Source: Octopus bimaculoides
Lineage: Eukaryota
Assembly: GCF_001194135.2 (NCBI RefSeq)
Contig: NC_068986.1
Span: 88,631,157 to 88,676,666 of the forward strand
Direction: 5' to 3'
DNA: 45,510 nucleotides
A model generated the notes under the pieces. The model was not told where the DNA came from. It did no database searches and worked only from the letters and a program-made list of their open reading frames with translations. A program made the position numbers and the translations under genes. Below, in pieces: positions 1,823 to 38,198 of the stretch (the first letter of the stretch is position 1; every line of letters begins with the position of its first letter).

Positions 1823-1863
<41 letters not shown>

Positions 1864-3413: not shown

Positions 3414-3444
<31 letters not shown>

Positions 3445-4390: not shown

Positions 4391-4894
4391 ATGGTTTTGA
4401 GTATTATTAAAATGTTTATGCATTATTATATCACACGTCTTTATGATATCAAGCAAAACTTTGAATGAAAATGTTTTCAGATTTACATATTTTAGTCACT
4501 GTTGCTGCTGCTGCTGCTGCAGAGATTTGTTGACGTTCCTCTAATTATTGTTTTTAACCCCAGACCATATCAATAAAAAAGAAGTTCGACAGTCATTATG
4601 ATATTAGATACAGTATATCGGAGTTCGATACGAATGAAAATTGTCACATTTCGAAAGAGCATAGTACATTGAATTTGAGAGATATGTTGCTGCTATTTCT
4701 GGCAGTTTCATTCATCGCACAAAAGCTCCTCAGTTGGCTGGCCAGTTTTTGTTGTTAGTTATTGTGTTGTTCTGGACTAATGCAACAATTTGAACTGTTT
4801 ACTCTCAGTTCTTTGTTTGATCGGATGTTTGACTTTATCCAGTCTCTTCCGTTGAAATATTAAGTCAATCCAGAGGAGTCACACAGTATATCAC

Positions 4895-4972
4895 ACATGC
4901 ACACACACACACACACACACTCACACACACAAACACACACAAACACACACGCAGACACATTCACACACAAGC

Positions 4973-5042
<70 letters not shown>

Positions 5043-5045
5043 AAA
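4895..5045. repeat. (CA)n microsatellite
   Basis: Directly visible. Confidence 0.95.
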
Positions 5046-5121
5046 CACTCACGCACGTGTTCGTGTCTGCATGTGTCTATGTTTGTATACATACACATAC
5101 ATATAAATATATATATGATCC

Positions 5122-5308
5122 AACTACCACTTTTTCAAGCATCTCAACAACTTCCTACGTGAGAAATGCTTCCAAAAACCAAGACGATGCCAAACACACC
5201 TTCAACGACTACATCGAATCTAGAACGTAGGATTTTTACGCTACTGGCATAAATAAACTTGTTGCGTGTTGACAAAGTGTATTGATTCTGATGGTGTTTA
5301 ATTTCGAT
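5122..5308 (+). mobile_element. 3' fragment of a mariner transposase
   Basis: With frame corrections reads YHFFKHLNNFLREKCFQ...DFYATGINKLV...KCIDSDG, a typical mariner C-terminus; no TIR pair seen. Confidence 0.8.
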
Positions 5309-5350
5309 TAATAGTTTTGCTTGAGCCGAGGTCGGCCAGCTATATATATA

Positions 5351-5391
<41 letters not shown>

Positions 5392-6344
5392 NNNNNNNNN
5401 NNNNNNNNNNNNNNNNNNNNNNNNNNNNNNNNNNNNNNNNNNNNNNNNNNNNNNNNNNNNNNNNNNNNNNNNNNNNNNNNNNNNNNNNNNNNNNNNNNNN
5501 NNNNNNNNNNNNNNNNNNNNNNNNNNNNNNNNNNNNNNNNNNNNNNNNNNNNNNNNNNNNNNNNNNNNNNNNNNNNNNNNNNNNNNNNNNNNNNNNNNNN
5601 NNNNNNNNNNNNNNNNNNNNNNNNNNNNNNNNNNNNNNNNNNNNNNNNNNNNNNNNNNNNNNNNNNNNNNNNNNNNNNNNNNNNNNNNNNNNNNNNNNNN
5701 NNNNNNNNNNNNNNNNNNNNNNNNNNNNNNNNNNNNNNNNNNNNNNNNNNNNNNNNNNNNNNNNNNNNNNNNNNNNNNNNNNNNNNNNNNNNNNNNNNNN
5801 NNNNNNNNNNNNNNNNNNNNNNNNNNNNNNNNNNNNNNNNNNNNNNNNNNNNNNNNNNNNNNNNNNNNNNNNNNNNNNNNNNNNNNNNNNNNNNNNNNNN
5901 NNNNNNNNNNNNNNNNNNNNNNNNNNNNNNNNNNNNNNNNNNNNNNNNNNNNNNNNNNNNNNNNNNNNNNNNNNNNNNNNNNNNNNNNNNNNNNNNNNNN
6001 NNNNNNNNNNNNNNNNNNNNNNNNNNNNNNNNNNNNNNNNNNNNNNNNNNNNNNNNNNNNNNNNNNNNNNNNNNNNNNNNNNNNNNNNNNNNNNNNNNNN
6101 NNNNNNNNNNNNNNNNNNNNNNNNNNNNNNNNNNNNNNNNNNNNNNNNNNNNNNNNNNNNNNNNNNNNNNNNNNNNNNNNNNNNNNNNNNNNNNNNNNNN
6201 NNNNNNNNNNNNNNNNNNNNNNNNNNNNNNNNNNNNNNNNNNNNNNNNNNNNNNNNNNNNNNNNNNNNNNNNNNNNNNNNNNNNNNNNNNNNNNNNNNNN
6301 NNNNNNNNNNNNNNNNNNNNNNNNNNNNNNNNNNNNNNNNNNNN
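5392..6344. other. Largest of 13 assembly N-gaps. Others: 3319-3413, 12310-12637, 14628-14856, 15755-16386, 18298-18307, 20224-20755, 24078-24619, 25401-26054, 26681-27116, 31860-31997, 38613-38829, 42058-42179
   Basis: N runs, nearly all flanked by microsatellites. Confidence 0.99.
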
Positions 6345-6389
<45 letters not shown>

Positions 6390-6547
6390 CAGAGATATAC
6401 ACATACACACTCAGGCACCTATAAAATGCTCTAGAAAGTCCACCCGTCTAGAATGGTTGTTTTTTGCACAAAATTACTAATATAGCTTAAATAGTATTAA
6501 TCAGGTGCGCTACCGTTACAACGGTTTATAGTGCGTGGATATGAGTG

Positions 6548-6594
<47 letters not shown>
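6548..6594. repeat. (TAGA)n tetranucleotide repeat
   Basis: Directly visible. Confidence 0.95.
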
Positions 6595-7024
6595 GTATAA
6601 TGGTGATCAATGGCATACGTGAAACTCTGAGTAGCAAAAGAATAACTAGATTCCAATTCTGTATTGAGTACATTTCCTCTGTCTTGTATGCTCAAATACA
6701 CACACACACACACATCCGCACATATTTTATATGTTATTATATGTGTATATATATGTATGTATATATGTATATATACTTCATGTTGTATGTCATGTTAAAG
6801 ACCATTACTATTTCATATATACATATATATATACTTATATATATATATGTATATGTGTATATGTAAAAGCAGAGAGGGGAAATTGAACACTACTGTAAAA
6901 ATGTGATGGAATATAGACAAGACAGGAATAGTGAACAGGGTGAGTGTATGAGGAGAGAGAAATATCTTCAGAGACAAGAGAATGAATATATTTTCGTCCT
7001 ACGTAAGAAATATTTCTGAACAGA

Positions 7025-7040
7025 CAGCGCCATCTGTTGG
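7025..7040 (-). promoter_or_regulatory. Candidate CTCF motif CCAACAGATGGCGCTG
   Basis: 13/14 match to CCASYAGRKGGCRS in otherwise AT-rich DNA; motif match only. Confidence 0.35.
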
Positions 7041-7482
7041 TGTCGATTGTTAAGTCATGTCAGATGTCAAGTGTAATTTTCTCCGTCACAGATCAAAGGT
7101 ACTCTGCTTGTAAGAAGTCCTAATTAGCATCAGTCATGCTTTATATAACATTTACCTTCGGCTTCGGAAATAGGGTCTAAGATTGTATGCAATGTAAATG
7201 GTGCGTGGGAGGGCGAACAAAAAAAACAGAAAAGATTAGTGAGATTGAGTGAAAGTGAGAGAGATGGAGAGAGAGAAGGGGTGAATGAGAAAAAGAAGGT
7301 CAGATATTTTGTTGCGGATACATAGGTTGTATGCAAAGGGATAATTTTGAAAGGCCGTATAAATACATGCATGTACACACACAAGCATACGCGCTCTCAT
7401 ACTTACACGTACACACACATCTGTATATGCGGTGGGTGTATCCATGCATATGTATATATATATATATGTATATATATATATG

Positions 7483-7635
7483 CTGGTGTGTTTACTTCCA
7501 CGTCACTTAGCAGTTCGGCAAAAGAACCGATAGAATAAGTACTAGGCTTACAAAGAATAAGTCCTGGGGTCGATTTACTCGACTAAAGGCGGTGTTCCAG
7601 CATGGCCGCAGTCAAATGACTAAAACAAGTAAAGA

Positions 7636-7637
<2 letters not shown>
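7483..7637 (+). mobile_element. SINE 3' module (...ggcggtgttccagcatggccgcagtcaaatgac...) with all CpGs intact
   Basis: Homologous to copies at 29540, 38290, 38855, 39548, 41640 and 41846 in this window. Confidence 0.85.
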
Positions 7638-7679
<42 letters not shown>

Positions 7680-8321
7680 TATAAGTTTAAATATATATAT
7701 ATATATATTATTTATAAGTTTAAATATATATACGTATATTTGTATCTCTGTGTGTATGCACCTATGTATGTGTGTGTATGTATGTATGTATGTGTGTGTA
7801 TGCTTTTATGCATGTATAAGGATTTGCAAGAAACGTTTTCGTTTTCTCCATTGTAATACCAGGCCCTGATACACTAGCGACGCCATTAAAATTATGCCTT
7901 TCTATCAACATGAATGCCACGGGACAGCTACAACTGCACGCAAGCAGTTGCATTATCAAATACCAGTATTCTTGGAGAACTACGTTGCGTCGAAACAATT
8001 GTAGCGAATAATAAACAAATGTCCAATCGTACAACTTCTTCTTGACTCCAATTTCTTCAATTTTATATTCATACACGGCGAATGCCCAAATTCAAATTCG
8101 GAAATATGTAATAATATTACCGATACTACTGGACTGTTCTGATGGTGGACGAACTCTACAATGTACTCTATCACTATCACGTTCCTAATGGTATATAACA
8201 TAATTATATATATACAAATTTTAATATTATAAGCATAATTATAATTAGGGTTCAGCAAAAATTGCTTCGCCACATACAGAAATTTAGAAATAGCAATTAA
8301 ATACTATTCCCCTACCATAAT

Positions 8322-8696
8322 AGAAGAAGAAGAAGAAGAAGAAGAAGAAGAAGAAGAAGAAGAAGAAGAAGAAGAAGAAGAAGGAAGAGGAGGGGGAGAA
8401 GAAGAAGAAGAAGAAGAAGAAGAAGAAGAAGAAGAAGAAGAAGGAAGAGGAGGGGGAGGAGAAGAAGAAGAAGAAGAAGAAGAAGAAGGAAGAGGAGGGG
8501 GAGAAGAAGAAGAAGAAGAAGAAGGAGGAGGAGGAGGTGGAGGAGGAGGGGGAGAAGAAGAAGAAGAAGAAGAAGAAGGAGGTGGAGGAGGAGGAGGAGA
8601 AGAAGAAGAAGAAGAAGAAGAAGAAGAAGAAGAAGAAGAAGAAGAAGAAGGAGGAGGAGGAGGAGGAGAAGAAGAAGAAGATGAAGAAGAAGAAGA
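8322..8696. repeat. (GAA)n/(GGA)n polypurine tract
   Basis: 375 bp with only three pyrimidines (T at 8538, 8583, 8682). Confidence 0.97.
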
Positions 8697-9957
8697 TATA
8701 TATATATATATGCTATTGGGGGAATGTTAAAATGGAATTGTGTTTTGTGTAAAGATCAAATACAGGTTACCCCAATCCTTTTTTCTTTTTTTCACTATAA
8801 AGATCAGTTTTGATGAATATTCCGATTCCCTTTTCTGCAAGTTAGGAACCAGCTTCTATATGCAATGTAATCGGTGGAGGTGCAGGAACTTCCTCATATT
8901 CATAAATAAGTACCCGAAATAAATTTATATGCAAAGGTTATTTTGCTTAAGTGTGATTGATTTTACCAACTATCTATCGTTAGCGAAAGAGAAAGTAGAT
9001 CCTATTCCTGAAGATTAAAGAGTCGGTAGATCTTTTTCCCTGAGGATTGAAAGAAAGAAATTTGTTTAATGAAAATATGATGGTTAAGGCGATTTCCAAT
9101 ACAAAATTTTAATTTTGGACTGTACTTTACCATAGAAGGACTACATTAATGATATCGATGAACTCTTAATAAATTTAATTTGAATTCATACAGATTCACC
9201 AGACTAATGTGTTTTCATTCATTTATTACCAAAAAAGCTGATATGTACTTTTACTGTATAAAGAATATAGAAGCATGCATCTTATAGCACATAATGAGAT
9301 TAAAATTAATTATAATTATCTTAACCAAATGAATATTTTGGATTTCAATTCAAAAACTAAATAATCGAGATGCATGATAACGTGAACGTTGGATGTTATC
9401 AAGCTGATATCATTCAATAGTATGTTCATTAATGATATCTTTGGAACTCTTAAAGTTATTGGCATACAATTAAGCAGCATTTACAAAATATTGTTGTTTC
9501 TTATGTTTGTGCAACAGTTGTGTTTTTATGGATTACTATATTAATCTGTATTAATGCAGGCATTAGAAATTGCCCGTTAATGCCAACATCTCTCCTAATA
9601 ATGAGCAATGTCGAATCTATCGCAAGAAAATATTTTTAACACATCTCAATTTTAAGCTTAGTTCCATGAAATTTAGTGAAATCAATGCATGAAGATTTCA
9701 GCGTGTTTTTTAAAAAATTAGTAAATATGAGCATAGCAAAGTGAAAGGATGGGAAATGTGGAGCTGCAGATCATGAATAAATTTCGTGCATACAAATGTA
9801 GAAATAGGAACCCAGTAGATATATGGGCAGTTGGATTTAGCTAAAAGTACATATCCTACACTAAAAAAATTACTTATCCTATAGCAAGATTTCTTTCGGA
9901 AAAACCTTAATGTTGTAAGAGTTGATCAGAGAGAACATCATTACCTAAATATTCATA

Positions 9958-10942
9958 TTAGGTTGTTCCGAAAATAATAGCAGCTCTAAGTGTTGTGTTT
10001 TGAAATGCAATTTTATCATAGTATTTTAATATTTTAGGTGAATTTCGACATACTTAATAATTGATGTGTGCTCTTTAATAATTTTCTACTTATTTCAGAC
10101 GCAAAACATTCTTGAAGCAAAGGCGCCGTTAATTATGTACATGAAAAAAAAAAAAGGACCATTGCTTACTTTTCTTGCATGAGTTCAAGCTTGGGTACAA
10201 TGCCTCCGCATGAGCTCAATGAAAATTTCGGCGTTTTGAAATGTGCTCGATGCTCTTACTGTGAAACACCAATGATTGTTTCCTTGACCGAATAGCCACT
10301 TGTGAGGAAAAGTGGATCCTTTATGATTACCGTAACAGATCAGGTCAATGGCTCGATCGCGATGAGACCCCAAACATTTTCCAAAGTTGCATCAGCAAAC
10401 GATTATTGATGACTGCCTGGTGGTCTGCAATTGGTGTTGTCCATTACAGTTTTCTGGAAGCCAATCACAACATTACAGCAGAGGTTTACTGCAATCAATT
10501 CGCTGAAATCCATGCTCTCTTGCAAAAAATGAGACCTGCGTTGGTGAATCGGCGTGGCCCAATTCTGCTCCACGATAATGCAAAGCCACATGTTGCAAGA
10601 ATGACACTGCAGAAACTCACAGACTTGGGATACGAGACTTTACCACATCCTCCATATTCTCCTGATCTTTCACTCAATGACTATCATTTTTTAAGCATTT
10701 AAACACGTTTTTACGTGATAAAACTTTCAGGTCCAAACCAGAGGTGACATCAGCTTTCAAAGATTTCTAAGCATCAAAGCCAATAAGCTTTTATCAACGA
10801 GGTATAAATAATCTCGTTGATCGATGGCAGAGATACATAGATGTTCACGGTTCATACTTTGACAAATCAAAACATTTCTATTGTTAATTTTTCCAGAATA
10901 AAATTGTTTCCGAAATCGGCCATTATTTTCGGAACAACCTAA
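9958..10942 (+). mobile_element. Internally deleted mariner element with intact TIRs
   Basis: TA|ttaggttgttccgaaaataatagc at the left end and gccattattttcggaacaacctaa|TA at the right end (23/24 identical inverted repeats); 985 bp. Confidence 0.95.
10141..10863 (+). pseudogene. Mariner DD34D transposase pseudogene
   Basis: Motifs FLDRIATCEEKWILYD, WWSAIGVVHY and LLHDNAKPH...HPPYSPDLSLNDYHF with 34 residues between the last two Asp. First Asp is replaced by Glu; frameshift after DYHF; in-frame TAA near 10768. Confidence 0.92.
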
Positions 10943-11367
10943 TACAATGCAAGCATGCTACAAGAGTGTAGAGGATGATGGAAGACAGCTGACTATTGTT
11001 GGATGCTATAGCGAACAATTCAGACCGTTTTCTTTTTTTTTTATATTCACGACAATATAAAAAATTAATATAATGTATATTGTTCGATGATATTTTATTG
11101 ATAAAAATTTGGTTAGTATTATTTATATATAAATTTATGAAGTGTTTGTAGTTTGTTTTGGTTCAAGCAATAAATATATTTCGTACGGAATGTTAATTAA
11201 TACACCATAATGTTAATTAATGCACTTTAACGTAAGAAGAAATAGGAACGGCTTTATTTCTAATACTAGAAGACGTTAGTTTGGAATCACCTTCCAGAAC
11301 GCATTCAAAATAGATGAATTTCATAACAGCTGAAAATAATACTTGTTGACCAATGCCAACATTATCA

Positions 11368-11412
<45 letters not shown>
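11368..11412. repeat. (TCG)15 microsatellite
   Basis: Directly visible; uninterrupted CpG-containing repeat. Confidence 0.95.
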
Positions 11413-11413
<1 letters not shown>

Positions 11414-26680: not shown

Positions 26681-27156
26681 NNNNNNNNNNNNNNNNNNNN
26701 NNNNNNNNNNNNNNNNNNNNNNNNNNNNNNNNNNNNNNNNNNNNNNNNNNNNNNNNNNNNNNNNNNNNNNNNNNNNNNNNNNNNNNNNNNNNNNNNNNNN
26801 NNNNNNNNNNNNNNNNNNNNNNNNNNNNNNNNNNNNNNNNNNNNNNNNNNNNNNNNNNNNNNNNNNNNNNNNNNNNNNNNNNNNNNNNNNNNNNNNNNNN
26901 NNNNNNNNNNNNNNNNNNNNNNNNNNNNNNNNNNNNNNNNNNNNNNNNNNNNNNNNNNNNNNNNNNNNNNNNNNNNNNNNNNNNNNNNNNNNNNNNNNNN
27001 NNNNNNNNNNNNNNNNNNNNNNNNNNNNNNNNNNNNNNNNNNNNNNNNNNNNNNNNNNNNNNNNNNNNNNNNNNNNNNNNNNNNNNNNNNNNNNNNNNNN
27101 NNNNNNNNNNNNNNNNAAGTACATACCTATATTTATATGTATACATACAAGCATAT

Positions 27157-27440
27157 ATGGGTACAGGGTATCAAAAAACCGTTAAACACAATGAGAAAAG
27201 AATACATAAAAACGAAAACATAGAAAACGAACTTGTTTTCGAACAACGAAAAAACAAACAAACAGGGAAACGAGACATGCGACATAAAGAGTATGCCCCT
27301 TCGTCAGTTGTCCCTGTTTCATCTACTCCGCGTTTCGAAGGTAAGGACAATACGCGACTTCCTTGAAACAGTCCTTCCCGCAAAGCAAATTAAATAAAAT
27401 TTCGGATTTTTTGCGGAGAGTGAAAGTGTTAACAAAAACA
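27157..27440 (-). mobile_element. Interspersed repeat, possibly a Penelope-like terminal repeat
   Basis: CpG-rich block with minus-strand cgaaacgcg and ctgacga motifs reminiscent of PLE termini; family assignment is from recall only. Confidence 0.4.
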
Positions 27441-28109
27441 GGACAGTAAGAACAAAACAGTAAAAACAAATGGTGAGGGCTGTTGAGCCAGGACGATAGA
27501 AAAATTATTATGAACGCTAGGTTATATATATATATTTATATAATATAATTAAAATATGTGAATGATAATCTATTATTTTCTAAAACATTAACTTTTACTT
27601 TACAGTATTAACATGGCAGAAGAGTATGCAGAATTTATAGTTCTTTTATGGAAATTTATATTTTCTTTAATATTTTTTCGATGATGCGAATGTCATTCTT
27701 CGATCAAGCGAATGACCTGCATTCATGCACCTACGTATGTTTGTTTGTCTGTCTATCTGCCTGTCTGTTTGTCTGTATGTGTGTAGTGTAAGTATGTATG
27801 TATGGTCAAGTATACATATTTATACATGAAGCTATATCCATATATGTTCATGCATATCACATTTGTGTGTGTACAACACACACACACACAAACACACACA
27901 CATACACACACAAACACACACACAAGCACACACACAAACACAAACACACACATATGTATATCGAGAGAGCGTAAATATGTACACATATATATATTTTACA
28001 CATTCAAACGTAGGTACCTTTGTATACATGTATGTATGTTTATACACATCTTGGACAGAGAACGAATTTATATTGGGGAGATATTATAGTATGTCTTTGT
28101 GTTTCAATG

Positions 28110-28205
28110 TCCTATATGACTGCATGGTTAAAAAGTTTATTTTGCAGTCACATTGTTCTTTCTGGGTTCTAAGCCATTGCATGGCACCTTGGGCAAGTGT
28201 CTTCC
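28110..28205 (+). mobile_element. SINE 5' (tRNA-like) fragment, CpG-decayed
   Basis: gcatggcaccttgggcaagtgtcttc matches the head module seen at 42205-42354 (minus) and 42405 (plus). Confidence 0.6.
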
Positions 28206-28430
28206 TCCAAAGATGTACTTGCTAAATCTCACTAGGTGAGTAATGATGCAGAGATTGAAGAAATTGATTAAATTGATGACAGTACATCTTTTACTAATGG
28301 AATTTGTCGTTTATACCAAGTCAAAAAAATTAGTTAATAGTATATATGTTCCTTTTTAAGCAGTTTTGTATTAAATACAGTTTGATATCTTTTTTATTTC
28401 TTAATTCCCCTTTCTTTTCTATGTTTTTAG

Positions 28431-28465
28431 GCCCGTTTAGATATTCCTTTTGGAACTCATCATTC
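28431..28465 (+). CDS. TDP1: TDP1 coding exon, first detectable (ARLDIPFGTHH-S); contains catalytic His of the first HxK motif
   Basis: Pyrimidine tract tttcttttctatgtttttag acceptor and gtgagt donor; 35 bp, phase 0 to 2; matches human TDP1 AKLDIAFGTHHT (H263 equivalent CAT at 28461-28463). Confidence 0.95.
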
Positions 28466-28539
28466 GTGAGTATAATTAGTATTAATGAGCATTAATTAAT
28501 CTGTTCTTGTTTTTTTTTATTGTTATTATTGTCAACTAC

Positions 28540-28940
28540 AGGTTAGATCTTATTGAACAAGATTTATATGAAAAGCATTCCAATCATGATCATTTTGTCA
28601 TATTTGTAGACGCAATATGCTTAGGACCACATTATCAAATGTGTCCCTTTTAATTTTACAAAGGTAGTAGGTGTGATTTGAAGGAGAATTATCTACCTGC
28701 TATTTCTAGCAAAACGAATGCTTGCATGGGATCTGGCTCATTGCCCTGTTATTGTGGTTGTTCTTGAACCACAGGTCAGTCCTTATCAAGCAAACTTATC
28801 TATGATCTAAGGTTTTCCAGCTATGGCCATCCAATCTTATTTCCAAACACTGCATATGGGACCACATTATTCAGTATGTCCTTTTTATTTCTTAAAACAA
28901 TGGAATATTATTTGATGGAGATTTAACTGCTATTTCTCAC
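28540..28940 (+). repeat. Two tandem decayed copies of an interspersed repeat (ggaccacatta ... ctgctatttct)
   Basis: Motifs ggaccacattat and ctgctatttct recur about 230 bp apart; related pieces at 23298 and 44700-44790. Confidence 0.6.
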
Positions 28941-29384
28941 AAACATATACAGAATCTCTATTTAGTGAGGTGAGGTGAATGTATCATACAATGTAAATTG
29001 GAATATTGCCATGTTCCACACTTTAAGTATTTTACTGTCCTGCAAACTAACCAAATGCCAGTAACATGTCTTGATTGAAAGTTGTTTTGAAAATATTCTC
29101 CTATAAACTACCATACAAGGAAATAACATCCCTGTTGTCTTAAGATAACTTCAATAAAGAGAATTCTTATGCAAGCAATATTTTGAACCAGTTATAACCA
29201 GTATTTATACATCATATCAAATAACAATATTTAGATTTTCACATAATCAATCCCACTGCATCTCACCTTAGGCACATGTCTTTTACTGTAATCTCAGCAT
29301 AACCAATATCTTGTGGGTAAACTTGGTTGATGGAAAGTGTGTGGAAGTCTCATACATACATACATACATGCATGCATCTATACA

Positions 29385-29420
<36 letters not shown>

Positions 29421-29539
29421 TAGATGCATACATATGTACATACATTATACATACACATGAACATACATGCATACATATGTAGATGCGTACGTAGATAGAT
29501 AGATACATACATACATACATACATATGTATGTTTTTTGT

Positions 29540-29712
29540 GTTTGCTCCACACTTGACAACCAGTGTTGGTTTGCTTACATCCTCATAATCTAGCAGTTCA
29601 GCAAAAGTGACCAGCAGAATAAGTACCAGACTTAAAAATAAGTACTGGTGTTAAGTTCTTGTTTCAGTCGTTGGTCACAGTTCAATGATCAAAACAAGTA
29701 AAAGATAAAAGA
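29540..29712 (+). mobile_element. SINE 3' module, CpG-decayed
   Basis: Homologous to 7483-7637; preceded by a TA/CA microsatellite. Confidence 0.75.
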
Positions 29713-29931
29713 AGATATATGTTCTGTGTGTGTAAATGTGTTATGTGTATATACACACAAACCTTTCTGTATGTTTGTATAAAATGTCTTCTTTGATATT
29801 GGTTATTTTTTTAATACAGATTTAAGAGGATCTTGTGAATATTATTTATATAAACGATATTGAGTTTGTGAATAATGTTATGTTTCATAACTCTTTAGTA
29901 TAGTTTCTTAATTTTTTTTCTTCTTATATAG

Positions 29932-30024
29932 AAAGATGATGTTTCTTCTCTATGACAATGGTATGAGGGTTGTTATTCACACTGCTAACCTTATTCCTGG
30001 AGATTGGTACCAGAAGACTCAGGG
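29932..30024 (+). CDS. TDP1: TDP1 exon ([31 protein letters not shown])
   Basis: AG/GT flanks, 93 bp, phase 2-2; matches human [31 protein letters not shown]; K265 and N283 equivalents at 29933 and 29987. Confidence 0.97.
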
Positions 30025-31151
30025 GTATATATTTCTTCATAATATTTTTATGTAGGATTCCTTCTAACTTATTCTGATTTATAATAATACATTTACAGTA
30101 TTCTTGCATTTCTTCTTTTTCTTTTTACCACTTGTCACTTTCCTGAATTTTATGTCCATTTGTTCATGCATCATCATCATCATCCTTATTATTGTTGTTG
30201 TTGTTGGCATGTCATGACATTTTTTTGAGTTCCGTGAGTAGTTGTCGTTTTGTTGTGACAAATTTGTTGAACTCCTGTTTTCAATGTTGAATTCAGTTTC
30301 TGGGAAAGCTGCCCTCCTGGGAGCTAGTTTTTGTTGGAAAAAAAGCCCTCTTTAGAGAGTTAAATATGCGCTTTTTCTTTTTGAAAAATTACTTAGAAAA
30401 TTTTTGCAGAAAAAACATTGTCGACTGAATGAGGGAGTAAGAGCAAAAGGTTGAACAGCCAGTTCAACGATGACTTCCCCGCCTTCATCACCACTATTCT
30501 TCCTGCACATGAAAAGGAGGAAGAGAGGAAAGAAAGCAGGAGAGAAAGAATGACACTGTCACCACTACTACCAACATGAACAACAACAGCAACAAGCCAA
30601 GCGCCAATGGTTTCACCTTGGCAGTGAAACAAATTAAACAAGAAATTAATTTAACTTTAAATGAAATTAAAAATGCAAAAGGACTATGAAGGAAGGAAGG
30701 AAATAATGTCTTCCTAAACACCCCTCAAAATTTGATAAAGGGAAGTAACTGAAAAACTGTCACAGGATTTTAAATATAAAGAAGAAAAGGGTGGAACAAG
30801 CAATTCAACAACAATTGGAAATCGCACTGAAACCAATTTGGAACAAAAAGATATATAACAAGAGGAAAGTGCTTTGGCACTGTGGAGGTGCGTTTTGCAA
30901 TGGATTTGTGGCCCTGTATTCATCATCATTATTACAAGGGTGTTGGATTAGCAGATTAAGCTCTATTAGATCTACCATTAAAGAAACAGCACACTCCATG
31001 CAACAAACTGTCATACAATTGCTTTCCATCCGGTTGAGGTTAATAAAATAAAGGACCAGTCATGTACTTAGCTTGATGTAATTGACTGACCTCTTCTCCC
31101 AAATTGCTGGCCTCATTCTTAAATTAAAAACAGTTATTATTATCATTACTC

Positions 31152-31352
31152 AGGTGGTGGATTGGCAGAATCATTAGAGCATTAGATTGTATTCCTTGCC
31201 ATATTTGTTCCAGCTTTTTATGTTCTGAGTTCAAATTTGCTATCCTGTAGCAATCAATAAAATACAGAACCATTCTAAGTGCTAGTGTTGGTGCCATTGA
31301 CTAACTCCTTCTTTTGAAATTACTGGTCTTGTGCCTAAGTTAGAAACAATTG
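31152..31352 (+). mobile_element. SINE, internally deleted
   Basis: ggcagaatcattag, gttctgagttcaaatt and ggtcttgtgcctaagttagaaac motifs shared with the 31389 copy. Confidence 0.65.
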
Positions 31353-31388
31353 TTATTACGATTTATTATTATTCATATATTTTATGAA

Positions 31389-31607
31389 AGTGGTGAGCTG
31401 GTAGAATTATTAGCATGCTGGGAAAAATGCTTAGCATTTCATCCATCTTTATGTATGTTCTGAGTTCAAATTCCACCAAAGTCGACTTTGCCTTTCATCC
31501 TTTCAGGGTAAGTAAAATAAGTACCAGTTGAGCACTGAGGTCGATGTAATCAACTTACCCCCTCTCCCAAAATCGATGGCCATGTGCCAAAATTTGAAAC
31601 CATTATT
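31389..31607 (+). mobile_element. Full-length SINE ending 25 nt before a TDP1 acceptor
   Basis: Colinear with the copy at 33881-34097. Confidence 0.85.
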
Positions 31608-31632
31608 AATATATTTCATGTTTCCTGCTTAG

Positions 31633-31803
31633 GGTTTGGGTCAGTCCATTATTTCCAAAGCTCCGTGGTGGCGCCAACAAGAATGATGGACAGTCACCAA
31701 CAGCTTTCAAGAGAGACCTTATTCAGTATGTTGCTGCATATCGCAATCCCAGTCTGGCTACATGGGAGAAACATCTTCTAGAACATGACATGTCTAGTGC
31801 CAA
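31633..31803 (+). CDS. TDP1: TDP1 exon (VWVSPLFPKLRGGANKNDGQSPTAFKRDLIQYVAAYRNPSLATWEKHLLEHDMSSA-K)
   Basis: cttag acceptor, gtaagt donor, 171 bp, phase 2-2; aligns to human IWLSPLYP...SPTHFKADLISYLMAY...W...HDLS. Confidence 0.95.
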
Positions 31804-31997
31804 GTAAGTTGGAAATTCAGTTTTTTTATAGTTTTCTCCTTTTTTTTGCATGCACGTGTNNNNNNNNNNNNNNNNNNNNNNNNNNNNNNNNNNNNNNNNN
31901 NNNNNNNNNNNNNNNNNNNNNNNNNNNNNNNNNNNNNNNNNNNNNNNNNNNNNNNNNNNNNNNNNNNNNNNNNNNNNNNNNNNNNNNNNNNNNNNNN

Positions 31998-32066
<69 letters not shown>

Positions 32067-32734
32067 CTTGACATCATGTGTTAATTGTGGATAAATGTCA
32101 ATGTCACACAAGCAGTGTTGTTCAGTTGCAGTCTTCTGGCCAACATGCTGTTCATGTCTGAAAGACTAGAAGAGATGTTACCTTACTTAGGAACTTGAAG
32201 TTTGGCAACAGGAAGAGCATCTTGCCATAGAAAATCTACTTCATCAAATTTCATCTGTCTCATGCAAAGAAAGAAAAGTGGACCAATTCCTCTTTGACTA
32301 GTGGAAAAATGGCAGGAAGAAGGTGGAAGTCTTTTCTAAATGTTTGTCACAGGGGGTTCAATCTACTAAAGTCACTCAAGGTGGTGTTAAATGGGCCAAT
32401 AGATTAGCTCTATAAGCTCTATAGCCATTCAAGAACAAGCGCACTCCATCCAACAAGCTTCAGCACAATTTCCATCTGTTCTTTTTCACTCACATGGTTT
32501 GGGTTGACATAAGTCTATGGTAGAAGATAATTTACTCAGGATGCTGTGCAGTGAGATTGAACTCAGAATCACTTGAATGCAAAGTGAACTTCTTAACTAC
32601 ATGGCCATGATTGTACCCTTATTGATTCATTACAATGTCATACACCTGTAAAGGTCCCAGACTCTACACTTCCCTTTCTGACAGTATCCCCATAATTCTG
32701 TGAGTTATTTTTGTATTTTTGTTTTCCTTTGTAG

Positions 32735-32813
32735 AGTATATTTAATTGCTTCTGTACCTGGCAGACATTCAATGCTCCAGAAAAACGCTTGGGGTCATCT
32801 GAAGTTAAGAAAG
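32735..32813 (+). CDS. TDP1: TDP1 exon ([26 protein letters not shown])
   Basis: ttttcctttgtag acceptor, gtatga donor, 79 bp, phase 2 to 0; matches human VYLIGSTPGR...WGHFRLKK. Confidence 0.97.
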
Positions 32814-33880
32814 GTATGAGGATTAATAATAAGATTTAATGTTAAATATGATGATGATATTTGCATATTTTTATTATAGACTCAGTCGAGTACCAGACTA
32901 CTCAACACTAATTAACTTACAGTGCAACACTTCAGAAAACAATTAAAATATAGGGCACAGGATCAATCTTAATTTCTTTTCTTTCTTACAAAAGAAAAAT
33001 CTGACTGAAAATAATTATTCTATGGAAAAAAAAAATTATTAATTTAAGCGGTCAGCAAATATGGGAGACAACTCTGTACATATCTAGGCTCACGACCAAC
33101 TTCAACTATTTTTTTCCTTGCTACATAATTATTTGTAGGTAGTTTTTGTTTTTAAATGTTCCTTGACTTAATATGTTAATACTAATCTTGCTATCATTTT
33201 CATGTGGATAGTGTTTTTGAGTACTTTATTTTTTAAAACAATTCTAGTATTCTATGATCAACCAGTGTATATCATTACAGTGGTTCTGACAAATACTAAC
33301 AACTTCCCTGTCAACTATATTAGAGATTATTTTGCCACCTTCCCATTCTTTATTCATGAGAAGACAAAATCGAATTTGCATGCATGTAATACTTCTTTCT
33401 TCACCATGATGTTGGACAGGCTTGAAATGTTTAAAATGACCTAATTTAATTAAACACAGCAATTTATTCCTTTTGCAATTTTCACAATTTCCCCTACCAA
33501 GGAAGCCTGCACCTCCATCAGAGATACTGTGTTATCTTACATCTGCTTAGTGATCCACCTATCACTACTTCATCTAGTACAGGGAAGTCTATAATCTGCC
33601 AATGGTGGTTATGTTGTCAGAAACATGCCTGGAATTGTCAGCTGTATTCAACAAAAGAATTACAAATAAACATATTAGTTGATGAGCATTGATTGAATCA
33701 CTAGATTATCAGGTAAAATACCTTGCACTATTTTGTTGAGTTCAAATTCCTGAGTTCAAATTCCACCAAGGTCAATTTTGCCTTTCATCTTTCTGTGGTT
33801 AATCAAATAAACACCTGTTAAATATTAAGGTTGAAAATCCTATTTGAGTCACGTTTACCTTTTATCATTTGGAGTTTGAA

Positions 33881-34097
33881 AGGTCGTGAGCTGGGAGTAT
33901 CATTAGCATGCCGGGAAAAATGCTTAGCAGCATTTCGTTTATCTTTATCTTCTGAGTTCAAACTCCATCAAGGTCAACTTTGCTTTTCATCCTTTCAGGT
34001 TCAATAAAATAGTACCAGTTAAGCACTGGGTTTGATGTAATTGACTTATCCACTTCTCTGAAATTGCTGGCCATGTGCCGAAATTTAAAACCATTAT
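33881..34097 (+). mobile_element. Full-length SINE
   Basis: Colinear with 31389-31607. Confidence 0.85.
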
Positions 34098-34496
34098 TTG
34101 ATGTTTGATAAAATAAGTACTAGCGTAGAGCCAGAAATCCTATCAGGGCCCAAATCCTGCTGAGGTCACCATTGCTTTCCATCATATGGAGTTGGATAAA
34201 ATAATTTTCTGATCAAATACTAGAGCTGAAAATCTTGCAATGCCAGAAATCAGTATTATCATTTTTTCATAAAACAAAATTATTTCCTATTAACTTTTTA
34301 ATGTTCCTTGCATTAAATATCTTTTCTAAACTAATACAATGTCTTGCTTGAAGCAAAGGAATGGCAGGTGTCGTAGTTGGTGATGCAGCTACCTTGTTCC
34401 GATTCCAGCTGTGAACTTATTTCTTTTTGTTTGAAACTGAAGTTTATGATACCTAATATTATTTATTGATGTTTTTGTTTTTTTCTTTTTTCTCAG

Positions 34497-34679
34497 ATTT
34501 TATTAGAAAATGGTCCTGATAAACTAGAAGTTGGTTCTTGGCCTGTTGTTTGTCAGTTCTCTAGTATTGGTTCACTCGGGCCTACTGCAGATAAATGGTT
34601 GTGTGGAGAATTTCACCAGAGTTTGGCTGCCTGTCGTGCCAGTATATATTCCACATTGACACCTGATAAACTGAAATTG
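34497..34679 (+). CDS. TDP1: TDP1 exon (ILLENGPDKLEVGSWPVVCQFSSIGSLGPTADKWLCGEFHQSLAACRASIYSTLTPDKLKL)
   Basis: Long pyrimidine tract plus cag, gtgagc donor, 183 bp, phase 0-0; matches human SWPVVGQFSSVGSLG...KWLCSEF. Confidence 0.97.
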
Positions 34680-36299
34680 GTGAGCAAATATTTGACATAT
34701 TTATTTTTTTACAGTGTTTGTGTGTGTGTATGTGTTGTATGGAATGTATGTTGTGGTATTAATGTTTTGTGCCTGTGTGTGTTTATTACACTGTGTTGAG
34801 TGTATTATGTTTGCATATATATTGTGTGCATGTTTTATCTCTTAGTCAGAAGCAAAGGACTGTGCACATGACACCTGACAGGATCTCCAAGGCTGGTAGG
34901 AAGGAGGAAGGAAGCTACCCTTAAACTGTAAATTTGGCTTGTATGCTCGCAACAGAGTAAACCCTGTTAAAGGTACCAAGAGAGCAGATGATGGTATTAG
35001 ACTGGGAAACAGATTAAGACTATCACTCAAGGTTTAAATTCAGAATGCAAAATGCCTGAACAAGTGCCACAAGGCTCATGTCTGGTGCTCTAATGTTTCC
35101 ATGAGTTCATCACCTTAGACTGAATTTATTAACCCCAGAAAGATGAAAGGCAAAGTTTGCCTTGGCAGAATTTGAACTTACAACACAAAAAGCTGGAATA
35201 AATATTTTAAGGCATTTCCTTCAATATGCTAACGAGTCTGCTAATTCACCACCTGTGTTGTGTACTACCTGTGTTATATTCACTGTGTTTGCGTTGTTAG
35301 TGTTTGTAGTACATGTGTGTGTATGTGCTGCATTGTTTGTGTATTTGTGTGTTGGGTGTGAGAATGGTGTGTGCGTGTGTTGCATTCACTGTGTTGGGTT
35401 TATGAAAGATGTGTACATGTATGTTTATGAGTATATGAATATAGAAAGATGACATACTCTTCAACAAAGATATGGCATTGAATGCAAATCTTTCACTCAA
35501 TTAGTCGTACACCAGGCTAAGATTTGCTGTAAACTAACACCCCAAATCATTGCAAATTAACATTTAATTTTCTAATCTAATTTAATGTATTTCATCCTCA
35601 AAGTTTATCCAGAGTAATCTCCCTTGATAATCATAATCCTTCAGAATTTCAAGTAATCGGTTTCAACTTCAGTCTCGTCAGTGTTTGTTTCAAAGTAATC
35701 TCCCATGACAATCCCCACCCTCGCTCCTATAATCTTTAATCTAATTTATTTCATGTTGAAAGTCTAGTCAGTGTATTTTTTTTCAGACTTGGCCTCATTT
35801 GATAATTACCTGACATTCAGTTTCTATTGGCGTTAATCTATGTAGGATATGGTATGTGTAGGAGAAGCGGATTTTGATGTTTCAAGCAAAGCCTTTCAGT
35901 GGAGCAAAACAGGAATAAATCTAAGAATTAGCACTGTGCAAAATTAATTTGCTCTGTGTCACCGTAAAGATAAATATAATTATTGTATATTCAAGGAACA
36001 AAAATGAAATACAGCTTAATTCGTCTTTCCTATGGGATATGAACTTATCTTAGTTTATGAACTTTAAGAAGTTTTACTAATACAAACTACCATTAATTTC
36101 TTTGGACTTTAGATTTGATTCTTTAATCTTTGTTTATGCAAATTTTATCTACTTAACACCTCCTACGTATGCAAGCATGTTTGTGCGTCTGTATGTATGT
36201 ATATATCTATCTATGTATGTATGTGGGTATTTTGAAAATACCTCATGGAGTGATGGCTGTGTCCTGCATAGGTACAGGTTGCCCTTTGGCAAGGTATAG

Positions 36300-36500
36300 C
36301 ACCCATTCAGCCACCCTTCCAAGGATATGGTAAAGCCATGGAACTGCAGCATGGTGGATTGTGAAGAGGTAGTGGAGGAGTTCAACTGGGTCAATGGTGC
36401 TTCTTATACTGATGGTGAGCAGAGGAATTCTAGAAGATCAACGGTCAGGATCACCAAGTTCTATGAAGAGAGTAACAGCGACACATCCATAAGAGTGGTG
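36300..36500 (+). mobile_element. Possible decayed RTE-type LINE reverse-transcriptase fragment
   Basis: GC-richer island; EVVEEFN resembles the EVVDEFxYLGS segment of RTE reverse transcriptases; heavily frameshifted. Confidence 0.35.
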
Positions 36501-36894
36501 TCCATGGTTGTATAATCAGCTAATGAAAGATTTACTATGACTCAAGCTCTCAATTCAAATTCATAATAATGGAATTGGATGGCGACAGTCATGAGAATCC
36601 CCAAAAAGCAAAAAAAAAAAAAAAAAAATGTGTAAATTTCAAATAATATTATCTCTGATAACATAACATAATGGGAACATACAATTAGTGCTTAGAGGAC
36701 TTTCTGCCTAAGCTCTAACTTGAACTGCAACTAAAACTGGGATATTAAAGCTGCCTAATGAAGATTGGCTAAAGGCAGTGTTTCAGTTGAGCAAGTATGT
36801 GAATAATAGAATAAAAGAATAAACAAGCAAACAACGGAAATCAAGTCAGATTATGACATTTATATAATTAAACATTGACACAAAATGAGGGTGG

Positions 36895-37597
36895 AATAAG
36901 GCAGAATGTTAAACTGAAAGCATATTTTAATATAGATGTGCATAAGGAGGATTAAAAAGGATTTCTAACCGGCTTTCATTGCATGGCAAATTTTCAAGAA
37001 GAGAGAAAATGAAAATAATGTTTTTTACAAAAATATAAAAAATATATAAAAAAAATAAATATACCACAACATTATATTGTCTTTGAGTTTTTAAAGTTCA
37101 ATGGTAATCCATATAGATAATTGTTAGATAGATTAGGATGCATGGAATTAAGAATGGTGTTGTGTTTAATAAAGCCTGAGAGTTTATGTGTTAAACAGGA
37201 AGTGTGTGTAAGGGAAGACAATTCTGGCATGAGATCTCATATAGTGATAATTCAGTATAAAACCCACAGAATTGCCTTCCCTTACAGACACTTCCTGTTT
37301 TGACACAAACTTTCAGGCTTTATTAAACACAACACCATTCTTAATTCCATGCATCCTAATCTATCTAACAATTATCTATATGGATTACCATTGAACTTTA
37401 AAAACTCAAAGACAATATAATGTTGTGGTATACTTATTTTTTTATATATTTTTTATATTTTTGTAAAAAAACATTATTTTCATTTTCCCTCTTCTTGAAA
37501 ATTTGCCATGCAATGAAAACCGGTTAGAAATCCTTTTTAATCCTCCTTATGCACATCTATATTAAAATATGCTTTCAGTTTAGCATTCTGCCTTATT
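36895..37597. repeat. Long near-perfect inverted repeat (foldback): about 332 bp arms and a 40 bp spacer
   Basis: 36895-37226 is the reverse complement of 37267-37597, with about 10 substitutions and about 3 indels by hand alignment (about 96%). Confidence 0.97.
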
Positions 37598-37618
37598 ATT
37601 ATTATTATTTTTTATTTT

Positions 37619-37659
<41 letters not shown>

Positions 37660-37660
<1 letters not shown>

Positions 37661-38198
37661 TAAAATTCAGATAAGTTATCATTATCTATAAAAATAATGA
37701 TAAAGTGGCCAGCAAAGATAATCCAAATATGCAAAATATATAATAAAAAGTCAGGATACAATATGCACCGGTTTGCTTGAAAGAGGAGTTAAAACCCTCT
37801 AAGACCACACATCTCTCACTATATATAAATATGCATGGAGAATATAGCAAATACATTTCTCCAAAACAGTCCTCCCACTTGCAAAATACAAATAGGAGCA
37901 TAGATATCCTAGTATCATTTGATTTTGCTTCTTGTATCAAACCAACACTTAAAGCTCATCAGCTAGGCTTATTATGTAAACTATTTCAAAAAACGTATTT
38001 GCCCTCCCGTGTGTGTTGTTCATTTGAAGGCTCCATGACTTCCAAATGAACATTAGTGAGCAAGTATAAAGTTAAAATTCAAATAAGTTATAAAAATAAT
38101 GATAAAGTGGCCAGCAAATGTAATCCAAATATGCAAAATATATAAAAAGAAGTCAGAGTACAATATGCACCTGTTTGCTTGAAAGAGGAGTTAAAACC
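37660..38198 (+). repeat. Direct duplication of about 130 bp (37660-37796 and 38072-38198)
   Basis: Shared ataaaaataatgataaagtggccagcaaa...caatatgcacc.gtttgcttgaaagaggagttaaaacc. Confidence 0.9.

What the first reader, a model, noticed from the sequence alone, without database searches (positions are those of the whole stretch)
27750..28430. Sharp CpG boundary at about 28.07 kb, just before the TDP1 exons
Hand counts of CG left of the boundary: about 15 in 1-600, 12 in 26161-26580 and about 22 in 27180-27720. Right of it: 1 in 28621-29340 and about 3 in 32161-32940. Paired repeat copies show the same thing. The SINE tail at 7483 keeps 7 CpGs while its homologues at 29540, 38855 and 41640 have them as TpG/CpA, and gcgaccgcgtag (about 23318) corresponds to gtgtccatatag (about 44776). 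A (TCG)15 run survives at 11368. This is the footprint expected from long-term germline gene-body methylation on the right, which is established for invertebrate housekeeping genes, with unmethylated DNA on the left. The switch occurs over a few hundred bp inside a contig (no N between 27117 and 31859), next to a CA/TA microsatellite.
Basis: partly seen in the sequence, partly recalled or inferred. Interest (0 to 1): 0.75.

Follow-up and report, generated by a model that had tools for sequence, protein, structure and literature searches.

The report
CpG step at a synteny break
The sharp drop in CpG content is real and carries the mutational footprint of germline DNA methylation over the TDP1 gene, but it falls exactly where this Octopus bimaculoides sequence stops matching two sister-species genomes, so the boundary is probably a false assembly join, not a natural edge of the gene.

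Summary
CpG o/e is 0.83 in 1-27748 and 0.24 in 27749-45510 at equal GC. There is one change point (27734/27749, LLR 117; 0 of 1000 block shuffles reach it).

The cause of the contrast is domain-specific CpG→TpG/CpA decay. At equal non-CpG divergence, repeat copies keep 74% of ancestral CpGs in CpG-rich flanks and 25% in CpG-poor flanks.

The first TDP1 exon after the step encodes residue 582 of a 939-aa protein, so it is not the start of the gene.

The window is O. bimaculoides (0 of 261 mismatches to its TDP1 models). [quoted passage not shown] Nothing to the left is orthologous. In those species the next upstream exon lies 3.3-3.8 kb away and there is no CpG step.

The junction consists of a repeat, microsatellites and a SINE fragment, 0.6 kb from a gap. 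Both O. bimaculoides TDP1 models are 5'-truncated although the exons are under strong constraint (dN/dS 0.07).

A misjoin is most likely (about 0.6). A real lineage-specific rearrangement is the main rival (about 0.27). The underlying phenomenon is already known.

The parts
1..27734 (.). CpG-replete block (o/e 0.83; 0.86 after masking). It is rich in TEs and microsatellites and contains 10 N gaps. No TDP1 exon is present and it is not orthologous to the TDP1 loci of O. sinensis or O. vulgaris.
2218..3052 (-). Very old mariner-type transposase relic: at least 8 in-frame stops and about 27-30% aa identity to intact transposases. Its surroundings are still CpG-rich (0.75).
7480..7640 (+). SINE copy that keeps 7 of 7 ancestral CpGs at 5.8-7.0% non-CpG divergence.
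10151..10863 (+). Mariner relic (Pfam Transposase_1, E = 1.6e-18) with stops, a frameshift and an internal deletion. CpG o/e is 0.86. It is 85% identical in DNA to an O. sinensis copy (L002).
26681..27116 (.). Assembly gap (436 N), 0.6 kb left of the step.
27117..27734 (.). Last CpG-rich piece (23 CpGs, o/e 1.4). Its 27119-27437 part is a dispersed-repeat copy, 69% identical to L003 52412-52730.
27738..28050 (.). Compound imperfect microsatellite block: (TGTC)n and (TGTA)n at 27738-27804, (AC)38 at 27876-27952, then TA/TG-rich sequence. The compositional switch occurs across it, and the maximum-likelihood change point (27734/27749) is at its left edge.
28051..28325 (.). CpG-poor stretch (2 CpGs) that is not orthologous to the sister species. 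It contains an old SINE head fragment (28114-28212, about 70% identical to many copies) and ends in an A7 run.
28326..45510 (+). CpG-depleted domain (o/e 0.24), collinear at 85-94% identity with O. vulgaris L004 63450-83571 and O. sinensis L003 64179-80110. It contains TDP1 introns, with their embedded decayed repeats, and the TDP1 exons.
28431..28465 (+). TDP1 exon encoding ARLDIPFGTHH(S), the start of HKD motif 1. It corresponds to residues 582-593 of O. sinensis TDP1 X2 (939 aa).
29932..30024 (+). TDP1 exon ([31 protein letters not shown]).
31633..31803 (+). TDP1 exon.
32735..32813 (+). TDP1 exon.
34497..34679 (+). TDP1 exon.
44046..44161 (+). TDP1 exon.
45075..45182 (+). TDP1 exon carrying HKD motif 2 (PHIKTY). 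The gene continues beyond the window.

Best explanation
Two pieces of DNA with different germline-methylation histories abut at a microsatellite.

The right piece (from about 28.05-28.33 kb on) is the 3' two-thirds of the Octopus bimaculoides TDP1 gene. Its exons, introns and embedded repeats have been CpG-methylated in the germline since before the split from O. vulgaris and O. sinensis. They have lost about three-quarters of their CpGs to TpG/CpA by 5mC deamination.

The left piece (27.7 kb or more) is old, TE- and microsatellite-rich DNA that has stayed unmethylated and keeps its CpGs.

The left piece does not belong at this position in TDP1. In two independent long-read chromosome assemblies the next upstream TDP1 exon lies 3.3-3.8 kb away and the intron is CpG-depleted throughout.

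The step is therefore a junction of unrelated sequence, not the natural 5' edge of gene-body methylation. Most probably it is a false join across the repeat/microsatellite/SINE stretch 27117-28325 in the highly fragmented short-read O. bimaculoides assembly.

Shown: the step, its mutational nature, the gene anatomy, the loss of synteny, the absence of a step in the sister species, and the truncated gene models. Inferred: that methylation (not measured here) is the cause, and that the junction is an assembly error and not a real rearrangement.
For: Mutational footprint:
- Left-versus-right repeat alignments show 42 sites with CG on the left and TG/CA on the right, against 2 the other way (redundant counts).
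- Over 30 repeat copies of 4 families from the window and octopus loci L001 and L002, retention of ancestral CpGs follows the flanking CpG o/e (Spearman 0.69, p = 2.5e-5). Retention is 95/129 in CpG-rich flanks and 32/126 in CpG-poor flanks, at mean non-CpG divergence of 0.132 and 0.144.
- A right-side SINE copy with only 3.6-4.2% non-CpG divergence has lost 7 of 7 CpGs. The left copy, at 5.8-7.0% divergence, has lost none.
- The left side holds a very degenerate mariner relic and is still CpG-rich, so it is old and not young.

Ancestral methylation of the right side:
- Strictly orthologous blocks have o/e 0.22-0.24 in the window and 0.25-0.27 in the sister species. Losses continue in both lineages, at 7.1% overall divergence.

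Gene anatomy:
- Seven AG/GT exons give a 261-aa ORF equal to residues 582-842 of O. sinensis TDP1 (98% identical).
- Residues 1-581 have no real match in the window.
- A TDP1 profile that detects the 12-aa HKD-1 exon finds nothing upstream of it.

Species:
- 0 of 261 mismatches to both O. bimaculoides TDP1 models, against 4 for O. sinensis and O. vulgaris.

Synteny:
- Collinearity with L003 and L004 starts at 28326-28329.
- Everything to the left matches only multi-copy repeats in non-collinear order.
- The sister intron is 3349 bp (L004) or 3808 bp (L003).
- There is no CpG step at the orthologous point: 0.58 against 0.45, and 0.52 against 0.44.
- Lineage-specific blocks elsewhere in the locus reach at most 1.9-3.8 kb.

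Assembly context:
- The junction is 0.6 kb from a gap and made of a repeat copy, microsatellites and a SINE fragment.
- The O. bimaculoides assembly has 713,915 contigs (PMC10700109).
- Its TDP1 models are 375 and 392 aa, against 939-977 aa in the sister species. The two models use different, non-conserved 5' exons, and the current model spans 337 kb.
- dN/dS of the window's exons is 0.07-0.08, so the gene must be intact in the animal.
Against: - No reads, mate pairs or optical/Hi-C data could be examined, so a false join is inferred and not shown.
- The junction carries no N, and it apparently survived the Hi-C/Chicago re-scaffolding into the v2 assembly. The 337-kb gene range of the v2 model suggests this.
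- The orthology break (28326) and the CpG switch (27734-28050) are 0.3-0.6 kb apart. The stretch 28213-28325 is not a recognised repeat in my roughly 300-kb sample. A simple 'switch inside one shared repeat' is therefore not demonstrated.
- Natural domain edges in gap-free assemblies are about as sharp, so sharpness itself does not argue for an artefact.
- Methylation was not measured here.
Confidence: 0.6

Rival explanations
1. The junction is real. In the O. bimaculoides lineage a large block (28 kb or more, possibly about 300 kb) of unmethylated, TE-rich DNA was inserted or translocated into the TDP1 intron just upstream of the HKD-1 exon, or the O. vulgaris/O. sinensis lineage deleted it. 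The step is then a true edge between a methylated and an unmethylated domain inside a transcribed gene.
For: - The sequence is continuous (no N) across the junction.
- The v2 gene model spans 337 kb on one strand with no other gene listed inside it, which fits a large gene-free block upstream of the exon.
- Many rearrangements separate these species (PMC10700109).
- Macchi et al. describe 6,545 O. bimaculoides transcripts with an unmethylated first third and a methylated 3' part, class MP 3 (PMC9476566).
- Natural edges are equally sharp.
Against: - The block is 7-15 times larger than any other lineage-specific block in the locus.
- It contains TE relics far older than the species split, so it cannot have built up in place.
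- Repeats that sit in the methylated part lose CpGs quickly, about 40% per lineage since the split. An inserted block would therefore have to be very recent or to resist methylation while being transcribed.
- Neither gene model finds the conserved 5' exons, including a 1.3-kb exon, anywhere in splicing reach, although the gene is under strong constraint.
Confidence: 0.27
2. One reading: the step is the natural, ancestral 5' edge of TDP1 gene-body methylation, with ordinary unmethylated intergenic or promoter-side DNA on the left.
For: - The right side is a housekeeping-type DNA-repair gene and is depleted through both exons and introns.
- Gene-body methylation with unmethylated flanks is the octopus norm (PMC9476566).
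- The sister loci show such edges beyond the 3' end of TDP1, at L004 103509 and L003 99143.
Against: - The first exon right of the step is codon 582 of 939.
- In both sister species the gene extends a further roughly 50 kb upstream and is CpG-depleted there too, with no step at the orthologous point.
- The left block is not orthologous to anything within the sister loci, including 10 kb of flank on each side.
Confidence: 0.05
3. No methylation is involved. The contrast reflects repeat age or composition, or a regional mutation bias.
For: - The left side is richer in microsatellites and gaps.
- Some other dinucleotides also differ slightly: CC/GG 0.9 against 1.1, TA 0.88 against 0.79.
Against: - GC and GpC are equal on both sides.
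- The deficit is specific to CpG and is matched by TpG/CpA at homologous sites.
- Retention follows the domain at equal non-CpG divergence.
- Old relics on the left keep their CpGs.
Confidence: 0.03

Closest known systems
Mosaic (gene-body) methylation domains of invertebrates, as mapped in Ciona intestinalis sperm (Suzuki et al.; PMC3827831)
   Same: - Domains are essentially fully methylated or fully unmethylated, with sharp boundaries.
- Methylated domains lie over the transcription units of broadly expressed genes.
- The pattern is the same in germline and soma, so it leaves a CpG-depletion footprint.
   Different: In this window the left edge does not coincide with an end of the transcription unit. 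It lies in mid-gene at a point where synteny with sister species is lost.
Octopus bimaculoides methylome (Macchi, Edsinger & Sadler 2022; PMC9476566), including class 'MP 3' genes
   Same: - Same species.
- Methylation there is binary, tissue-invariant, enriched in exons and introns of a subset of genes, and low on intergenic DNA and TEs.
- MP 3 genes have an unmethylated 5' third and a methylated 3' part. The old 392-aa TDP1 model, whose 5' exons are at about 1330 and 26368 in the window, would probably look like that.
   Different: For TDP1 the 'unmethylated 5' third' is not TDP1 sequence in the sister species. This case suggests that some MP 3 calls could come from gene models that cross assembly errors. 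That is an inference and was not tested.
Chimeric joins in short-read assemblies, detected as compositional or synteny discontinuities
   Same: - The junction lies in repeats and microsatellites next to a gap.
- Collinearity with independent assemblies is lost there.
- Gene models are truncated at the junction.
- A compositional statistic changes abruptly.
   Different: No read-level evidence was available, and the junction carries no N.
Vertebrate CpG islands and CpG-island shores
   Same: Unmethylated DNA retains its CpGs next to methylated, depleted DNA.
   Different: The CpG-replete block here is 27.7 kb or more, AT-rich (GC 0.34) and full of TE relics. It is not a 0.5-2 kb GC-rich promoter element.

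Membership tests
Invertebrate methylated/unmethylated domain mosaic (CpG-depletion footprint) | Step or bimodality in CpG o/e at constant G+C, specific to CpG | tested here: met
   CpG o/e is 0.83-0.86 against 0.24, with GC 0.34-0.36 and GpC about 1 on both sides.
Invertebrate methylated/unmethylated domain mosaic (CpG-depletion footprint) | The deficit arises by CpG to TpG/CpA transitions, faster than background and independent of sequence age | tested here: met
   Ratio of 42:2 in left-versus-right alignments. Retention is 74% against 25% at equal non-CpG divergence. TG and CA are mixed at the same columns. About 40% of CpGs are lost per lineage at 7% divergence.
Invertebrate methylated/unmethylated domain mosaic (CpG-depletion footprint) | The depleted domain coincides with a transcription unit, with its edges near the gene ends | tested here: not met
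   Met in the sister species, where the 3' edges lie about 4-5 kb past the last exon. In the window the left edge lies before codon 582 of 939.
Invertebrate methylated/unmethylated domain mosaic (CpG-depletion footprint) | 5-methylcytosine present in germline DNA on the depleted side and absent on the other side | not testable with these tools
   No methylation data could be queried. The supplements of PMC9476566 do not name TDP1.
MP 3-type octopus genes (unmethylated 5' third, methylated 3' part) | Both parts belong to one bona fide transcription unit | tested here: inconclusive
   The left block carries no conserved TDP1 exon and is absent from the sister-species gene. Only the old model's non-conserved 5' exons lie in it.
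Assembly misjoin | Collinearity with independent assemblies is lost at the junction | tested here: met
   Collinearity with O. vulgaris (ONT-based) and O. sinensis starts at 28326-28329. There is none to the left.
Assembly misjoin | The junction lies in repetitive sequence and/or next to a gap | tested here: met
   Gap at 26681-27116, repeat copy at 27119-27437, microsatellites at 27523-27547 and 27738-27952 and beyond, and a SINE head at 28114-28212. The stretch 28213-28325 is not a recognised repeat.
Assembly misjoin | Gene models are broken at the junction although the gene is functional | tested here: met
   The models are 375 and 392 aa against 939-977 aa in the sister species, and the current model spans 337 kb. 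dN/dS is 0.07-0.08.
Assembly misjoin | No long reads or read pairs span the junction | not testable with these tools
   No read data were available. Exact look-ups of ORF products across the junction found nothing in the collection.
CpG island / promoter | A short (0.5-2 kb), G+C-rich, CpG-replete element at a transcription start | tested here: not met
   The replete block is 27.7 kb or more at GC 0.34, with TE relics and no other change point.

The most novel reading that the evidence does not exclude
The junction is real and recent. A block of tens to hundreds of kb of unmethylated DNA now sits inside an intron of an actively transcribed, constitutively gene-body-methylated gene in O. bimaculoides, and it has stayed unmethylated right up to a microsatellite. 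That would be a natural experiment showing that transcription through DNA is not sufficient for gene-body methylation in a cephalopod, and that a domain edge can be held within a few hundred bp inside a transcription unit.
Probability: 0.2. Interest if true: 0.55.

Novelty: already known. Interest (0 to 1): 0.22.

Why it matters
As biology it is ordinary. CpG-depleted, germline-methylated gene bodies next to CpG-replete unmethylated DNA, with sharp edges, are established for invertebrates and for this species.

The useful points are practical.

1. A CpG o/e change point located, to within a few hundred bp, a place where the O. bimaculoides reference stops agreeing with two better assemblies and where the TDP1 gene model loses 581 codons. 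In mosaic-methylated genomes a mid-gene CpG step is therefore a cheap flag for misjoins or structural variants.

2. Methylation-pattern classes built on such gene models, such as 'unmethylated 5' third', may include artefacts of this kind.

If the junction turned out to be real, it would bear on how gene-body methylation is targeted.

Tried and rejected
- A 43-aa exon peptide was too short for the word-indexed protein search.
- That tool appears to list only proteins up to about 1.75 times the query length. This hid the full-length octopus TDP1. It was recovered later through the representative search and the cluster listing.
- Strand skews (GC, AT, TG/CA) were too noisy to show whether the left side is transcribed with TDP1.
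- A search of the supplements of PMC9476566 for TDP1, to read off its methylation class, found nothing.
- Exact look-ups of ten ORF products, seven of them from 27.1-28.2 kb at the junction, aimed at reaching independent contigs. None is in the collection.
- Locus look-ups for P0241 and P0384 found no record. The O. bimaculoides TDP1 locus was found, but no DNA was returned because the gene range is 337 kb.
- I looked for a young SINE with target-site duplications at the break. The element is only an old head fragment about 70% identical to other copies, so no insertion signature could be read.
- 'Young insertion on the left' was rejected as the cause of CpG richness, because the left contains very degenerate mariner relics.
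- 'Sharpness implies artefact' was rejected, because natural edges in gap-free assemblies are about as sharp.

Full report
**1. The observation**

The window has 13 N gaps, ten of them left of 27117. In 1-kb windows CpG o/e is 0.50-1.83 on the left and 0.08-0.41 on the right. G+C is about 0.34-0.35 and GpC o/e about 1 on both sides.

A binomial change-point model on P(G|C) puts a single step between C27734 and C27749. P(G|C) is 0.151 on the left and 0.042 on the right, with a log-likelihood gain of 117. The 2-lnL support interval is 27705-27860 and the 3-lnL interval is 27694-28123. Shuffling 500-bp blocks never approaches this value: the mean maximum LLR is 11.6, the highest is 44.3, and 0 of 1000 shuffles reach 117. 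Recursive segmentation finds no second change point. Masking 7.3 kb of tandem repeats leaves the contrast at 0.86 against 0.24, with GC 0.358 on both sides and TpG and CpA modestly higher on the right.

One supporting claim, the 23318/44775 pairing, is not better than chance.

**2. What causes the contrast**

Seven columns are inferred ancestral CpGs. The left copy keeps 7 of 7 at 5.8-7.0% non-CpG divergence. The six right copies keep 0-2, and they show TG in some copies and CA in others at the same column, which means independent deamination on either strand. The least diverged right copy (3.6-4.2%) has lost all seven.

All left-versus-right repeat alignments give 42 sites with CG on the left and TG/CA on the right, against 2 the other way. 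These counts are redundant.

I added copies from two unrelated octopus loci: L001 (O. bimaculoides) and L002 (O. sinensis), fetched through mariner proteins. Over 30 copies of four families, CpG retention follows the flanking CpG o/e (Spearman 0.69, p = 2.5e-5). Retention is 95/129 in CpG-rich flanks and 32/126 in CpG-poor flanks, at nearly equal non-CpG divergence of 0.132 and 0.144. So the difference is a domain-specific CpG mutation rate and not an age effect.

The left side is not young either. It holds three mariner relics, one of them (2218-3052, minus strand) with at least 8 stops and about 27-30% amino-acid identity to intact transposases, in DNA that still has CpG o/e 0.75.

This is the footprint expected from germline 5mC on the right and its long-term absence on the left. 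It agrees with what is published. In O. bimaculoides, methylation is binary, tissue-invariant, enriched in exons and introns of a subset of genes, and low on intergenic DNA and TEs (PMC9476566). In Ciona sperm, domains are about 100% or 0% methylated with sharp boundaries (PMC3827831). Methylation itself was not measured here.

**3. Gene anatomy**

TDP1 exons lie on the + strand. Seven exons with canonical AG/GT sites join into a 261-aa open frame with both HKD motifs. Their coordinates are 28431-28465, 29932-30024, 31633-31803, 32735-32813, 34497-34679, 44046-44161 and 45075-45182.

A profile of TDP1 catalytic domains detects even the 12-aa first exon (E = 0.03), but it finds nothing for the 60 conserved residues that precede it, anywhere in the window.

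The exhaustive representative search returned a 939-aa protein that is 98% identical to the window peptide. The cluster listing names it O. sinensis TDP1 isoform X2. The window's exons are its residues 582-842. Residues 1-581 give only low-complexity matches and no informative exact 6-mer.

The step is therefore not 'just before the TDP1 exons' in the sense of the start of the gene. It precedes codon 582.

**4. Species and gene models**

The window peptide has 0 of 261 mismatches to both O. bimaculoides TDP1 models and 4 to O. sinensis and O. vulgaris, so the window is O. bimaculoides. Shared repeat families agree with this.

The O. bimaculoides models are only 375 and 392 aa, against 939-977 aa in O. 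sinensis and 941 aa in O. vulgaris. The older model takes two non-conserved 5' exons from the window's left side, at about 1330 and 26366-26433; both have canonical splice sites. The current model uses a different 5' exon that is not in the window, and it spans 337 kb.

The window's exons are under strong purifying selection (pN/pS 0.07-0.08 against either sister species). The animal must therefore have an intact TDP1.

**5.

I obtained the TDP1 loci of O. sinensis (L003, 105 kb) and O. vulgaris (L004, 108 kb), both free of N.

The window's right side is collinear with both at 85-94% identity, starting at 28326-28329 (↔ L004 63450, L003 64179) and running to the window's end. Left of that point nothing is collinear. 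All matches are multi-copy dispersed repeats in scrambled order, even when the sister species' last 20 kb upstream is searched sensitively against the whole window.

In the sister species the exon ending '...KFPNVSLCQ' lies 3349 bp (L004) or 3808 bp (L003) upstream of the HKD-1 exon. In the window there is no such exon within 28.4 kb.

Elsewhere in the locus, lineage-specific blocks reach at most 1.9 kb (against O. vulgaris) or 3.8 kb (against O. sinensis).

The sister species show no CpG step at the orthologous point. The 8 kb to the left and the 8 kb to the right have o/e 0.58 and 0.45 in L004, and 0.52 and 0.44 in L003. [quoted passage not shown]

Strictly orthologous blocks are equally depleted in all three species: 0.22-0.24 in the window and 0.25-0.27 in the sister species. 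CpG losses continue on both lineages at 7.1% overall divergence. So methylation of this part of TDP1 predates the split, which is dated at about 34 My (PMC10700109).

**6. The junction itself**

From left to right it consists of:
- an N gap (26681-27116);
- a CpG-rich 0.6-kb piece whose first half is a dispersed-repeat copy (27119-27437, 69% identical to L003 52412-52730);
- TA, TGTC/TGTA and (AC)38 microsatellites (27523-27547 and 27738-27952, extending to about 28050);
- a CpG-poor but non-orthologous 275 bp (28051-28325) with an old SINE head fragment and an A7 run;
- the orthologous TDP1 intron, 105 bp before the exon.

The compositional switch happens across the microsatellite block. The piece 27117-27740 has 23 CpGs (P = 1e-11 at the right-hand rate), and 28051-28325 has 2 (P = 0.047 at the left-hand rate).

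**7. Interpretation**

The mechanism behind the contrast (methylation-driven CpG decay on the right, none on the left) is well supported.

The boundary coincides with the point where the O. bimaculoides sequence ceases to be TDP1 as judged by two independent assemblies. I consider a false join the most likely explanation (about 0.6). The O. bimaculoides reference is a short-read assembly with 713,915 contigs (PMC10700109). The junction is entirely repetitive and next to a gap. The foreign block is an order of magnitude larger than any other lineage-specific block nearby, and it contains relics far older than the species split. Two successive annotations failed to find the conserved 5' exons of a gene that is clearly under constraint.

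The main rival (about 0.27) is a real lineage-specific structural change, with a true methylation edge inside the transcription unit. Several points keep it open: the sequence is N-free across the junction, it appears to persist in the Hi-C-scaffolded version, real rearrangements between these species are common, and natural edges are equally sharp.

A non-methylation cause is very unlikely (about 0.03).

**8. Novelty**

The phenomenon is known. The specific boundary is probably artefactual. Its practical value is as a flag for misjoins or structural variants, and as a caution for methylation classes derived from gene models in this assembly.

Noticed in passing
L003 and L004, collinear with window 28326-45510: The sister species carry about a dozen precise blocks of 330-500 bp at points where the window has no extra sequence. 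The unaligned sister sequence has GC 0.44 and CpG o/e 0.60-0.68, against 0.25-0.27 in the aligned parts. Either a young TE family is active in the O. vulgaris/O. sinensis lineage, or repeats were dropped by the short-read O. bimaculoides assembly.
   Followed up: partly
L004 55763-57410; L002 6368-7276; window 31387-31571, 33879-34068, 4215-4358: One repeat family that is dispersed in the window forms tandem arrays with a period of about 184 bp in an O. vulgaris TDP1 intron and in an unrelated O. sinensis locus. The L004 array sits in a locally CpG-richer stretch (0.73-0.87) inside the otherwise depleted gene.
   Followed up: partly
Proteins P0241, P0381, P0379 compared with P0383, P0384: Octopus TDP1 is unusually long (939-977 aa). 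It has a Ser/Asp-rich N-terminal region of about 400 aa and a CCHH zinc-finger-like stretch (CRFGTACTRKNPTHWEDFEHH) before the catalytic domain. The O. bimaculoides reference models (375 and 392 aa) lack all of this.
   Followed up: partly
window 1330-1364 and 26366-26433 (+): These are the two 5' 'exons' of the old O. bimaculoides TDP1-like model XP_014785642.1. Both have canonical splice sites but no counterpart in the sister-species loci, so they are probably annotation fill-ins.
   Followed up: yes
L002 15166-15505 (O. sinensis): There is another sharp CpG step (o/e about 0.8 falling to 0.3-0.5) about 0.4 kb outside a DEAD_2/Helicase_C_2 gene. Locus L001 (O. bimaculoides) also alternates between 0.1-0.25 and 0.7-0.8. 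Such steps are common in octopus genomes.
   Followed up: partly
window 18621-19919; 8320-8700; 16500-16800; 11368-11412: The left side has extreme low-complexity blocks: an (AAT)n-like array at GC 0.19 with internal direct repeats, long trinucleotide runs that read as poly-Ser/Pro or poly-Asp in translation, and the (TCG)15 run.
   Followed up: no
window 2218-3052 (-), 5119-5263 (+), 10151-10863 (+): Three mariner/Tc1-type transposase relics of very different ages lie within 9 kb. The nearest named relatives are annotated 'SETMAR-like' in O. sinensis.
   Followed up: yes
tool behaviour: the search for homologous proteins listed no hit longer than about 1.75 times the query length (422 aa for a 241-aa query, 254 aa for a 145-aa query). 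Partial-gene queries therefore miss full-length orthologues.
   Followed up: yes
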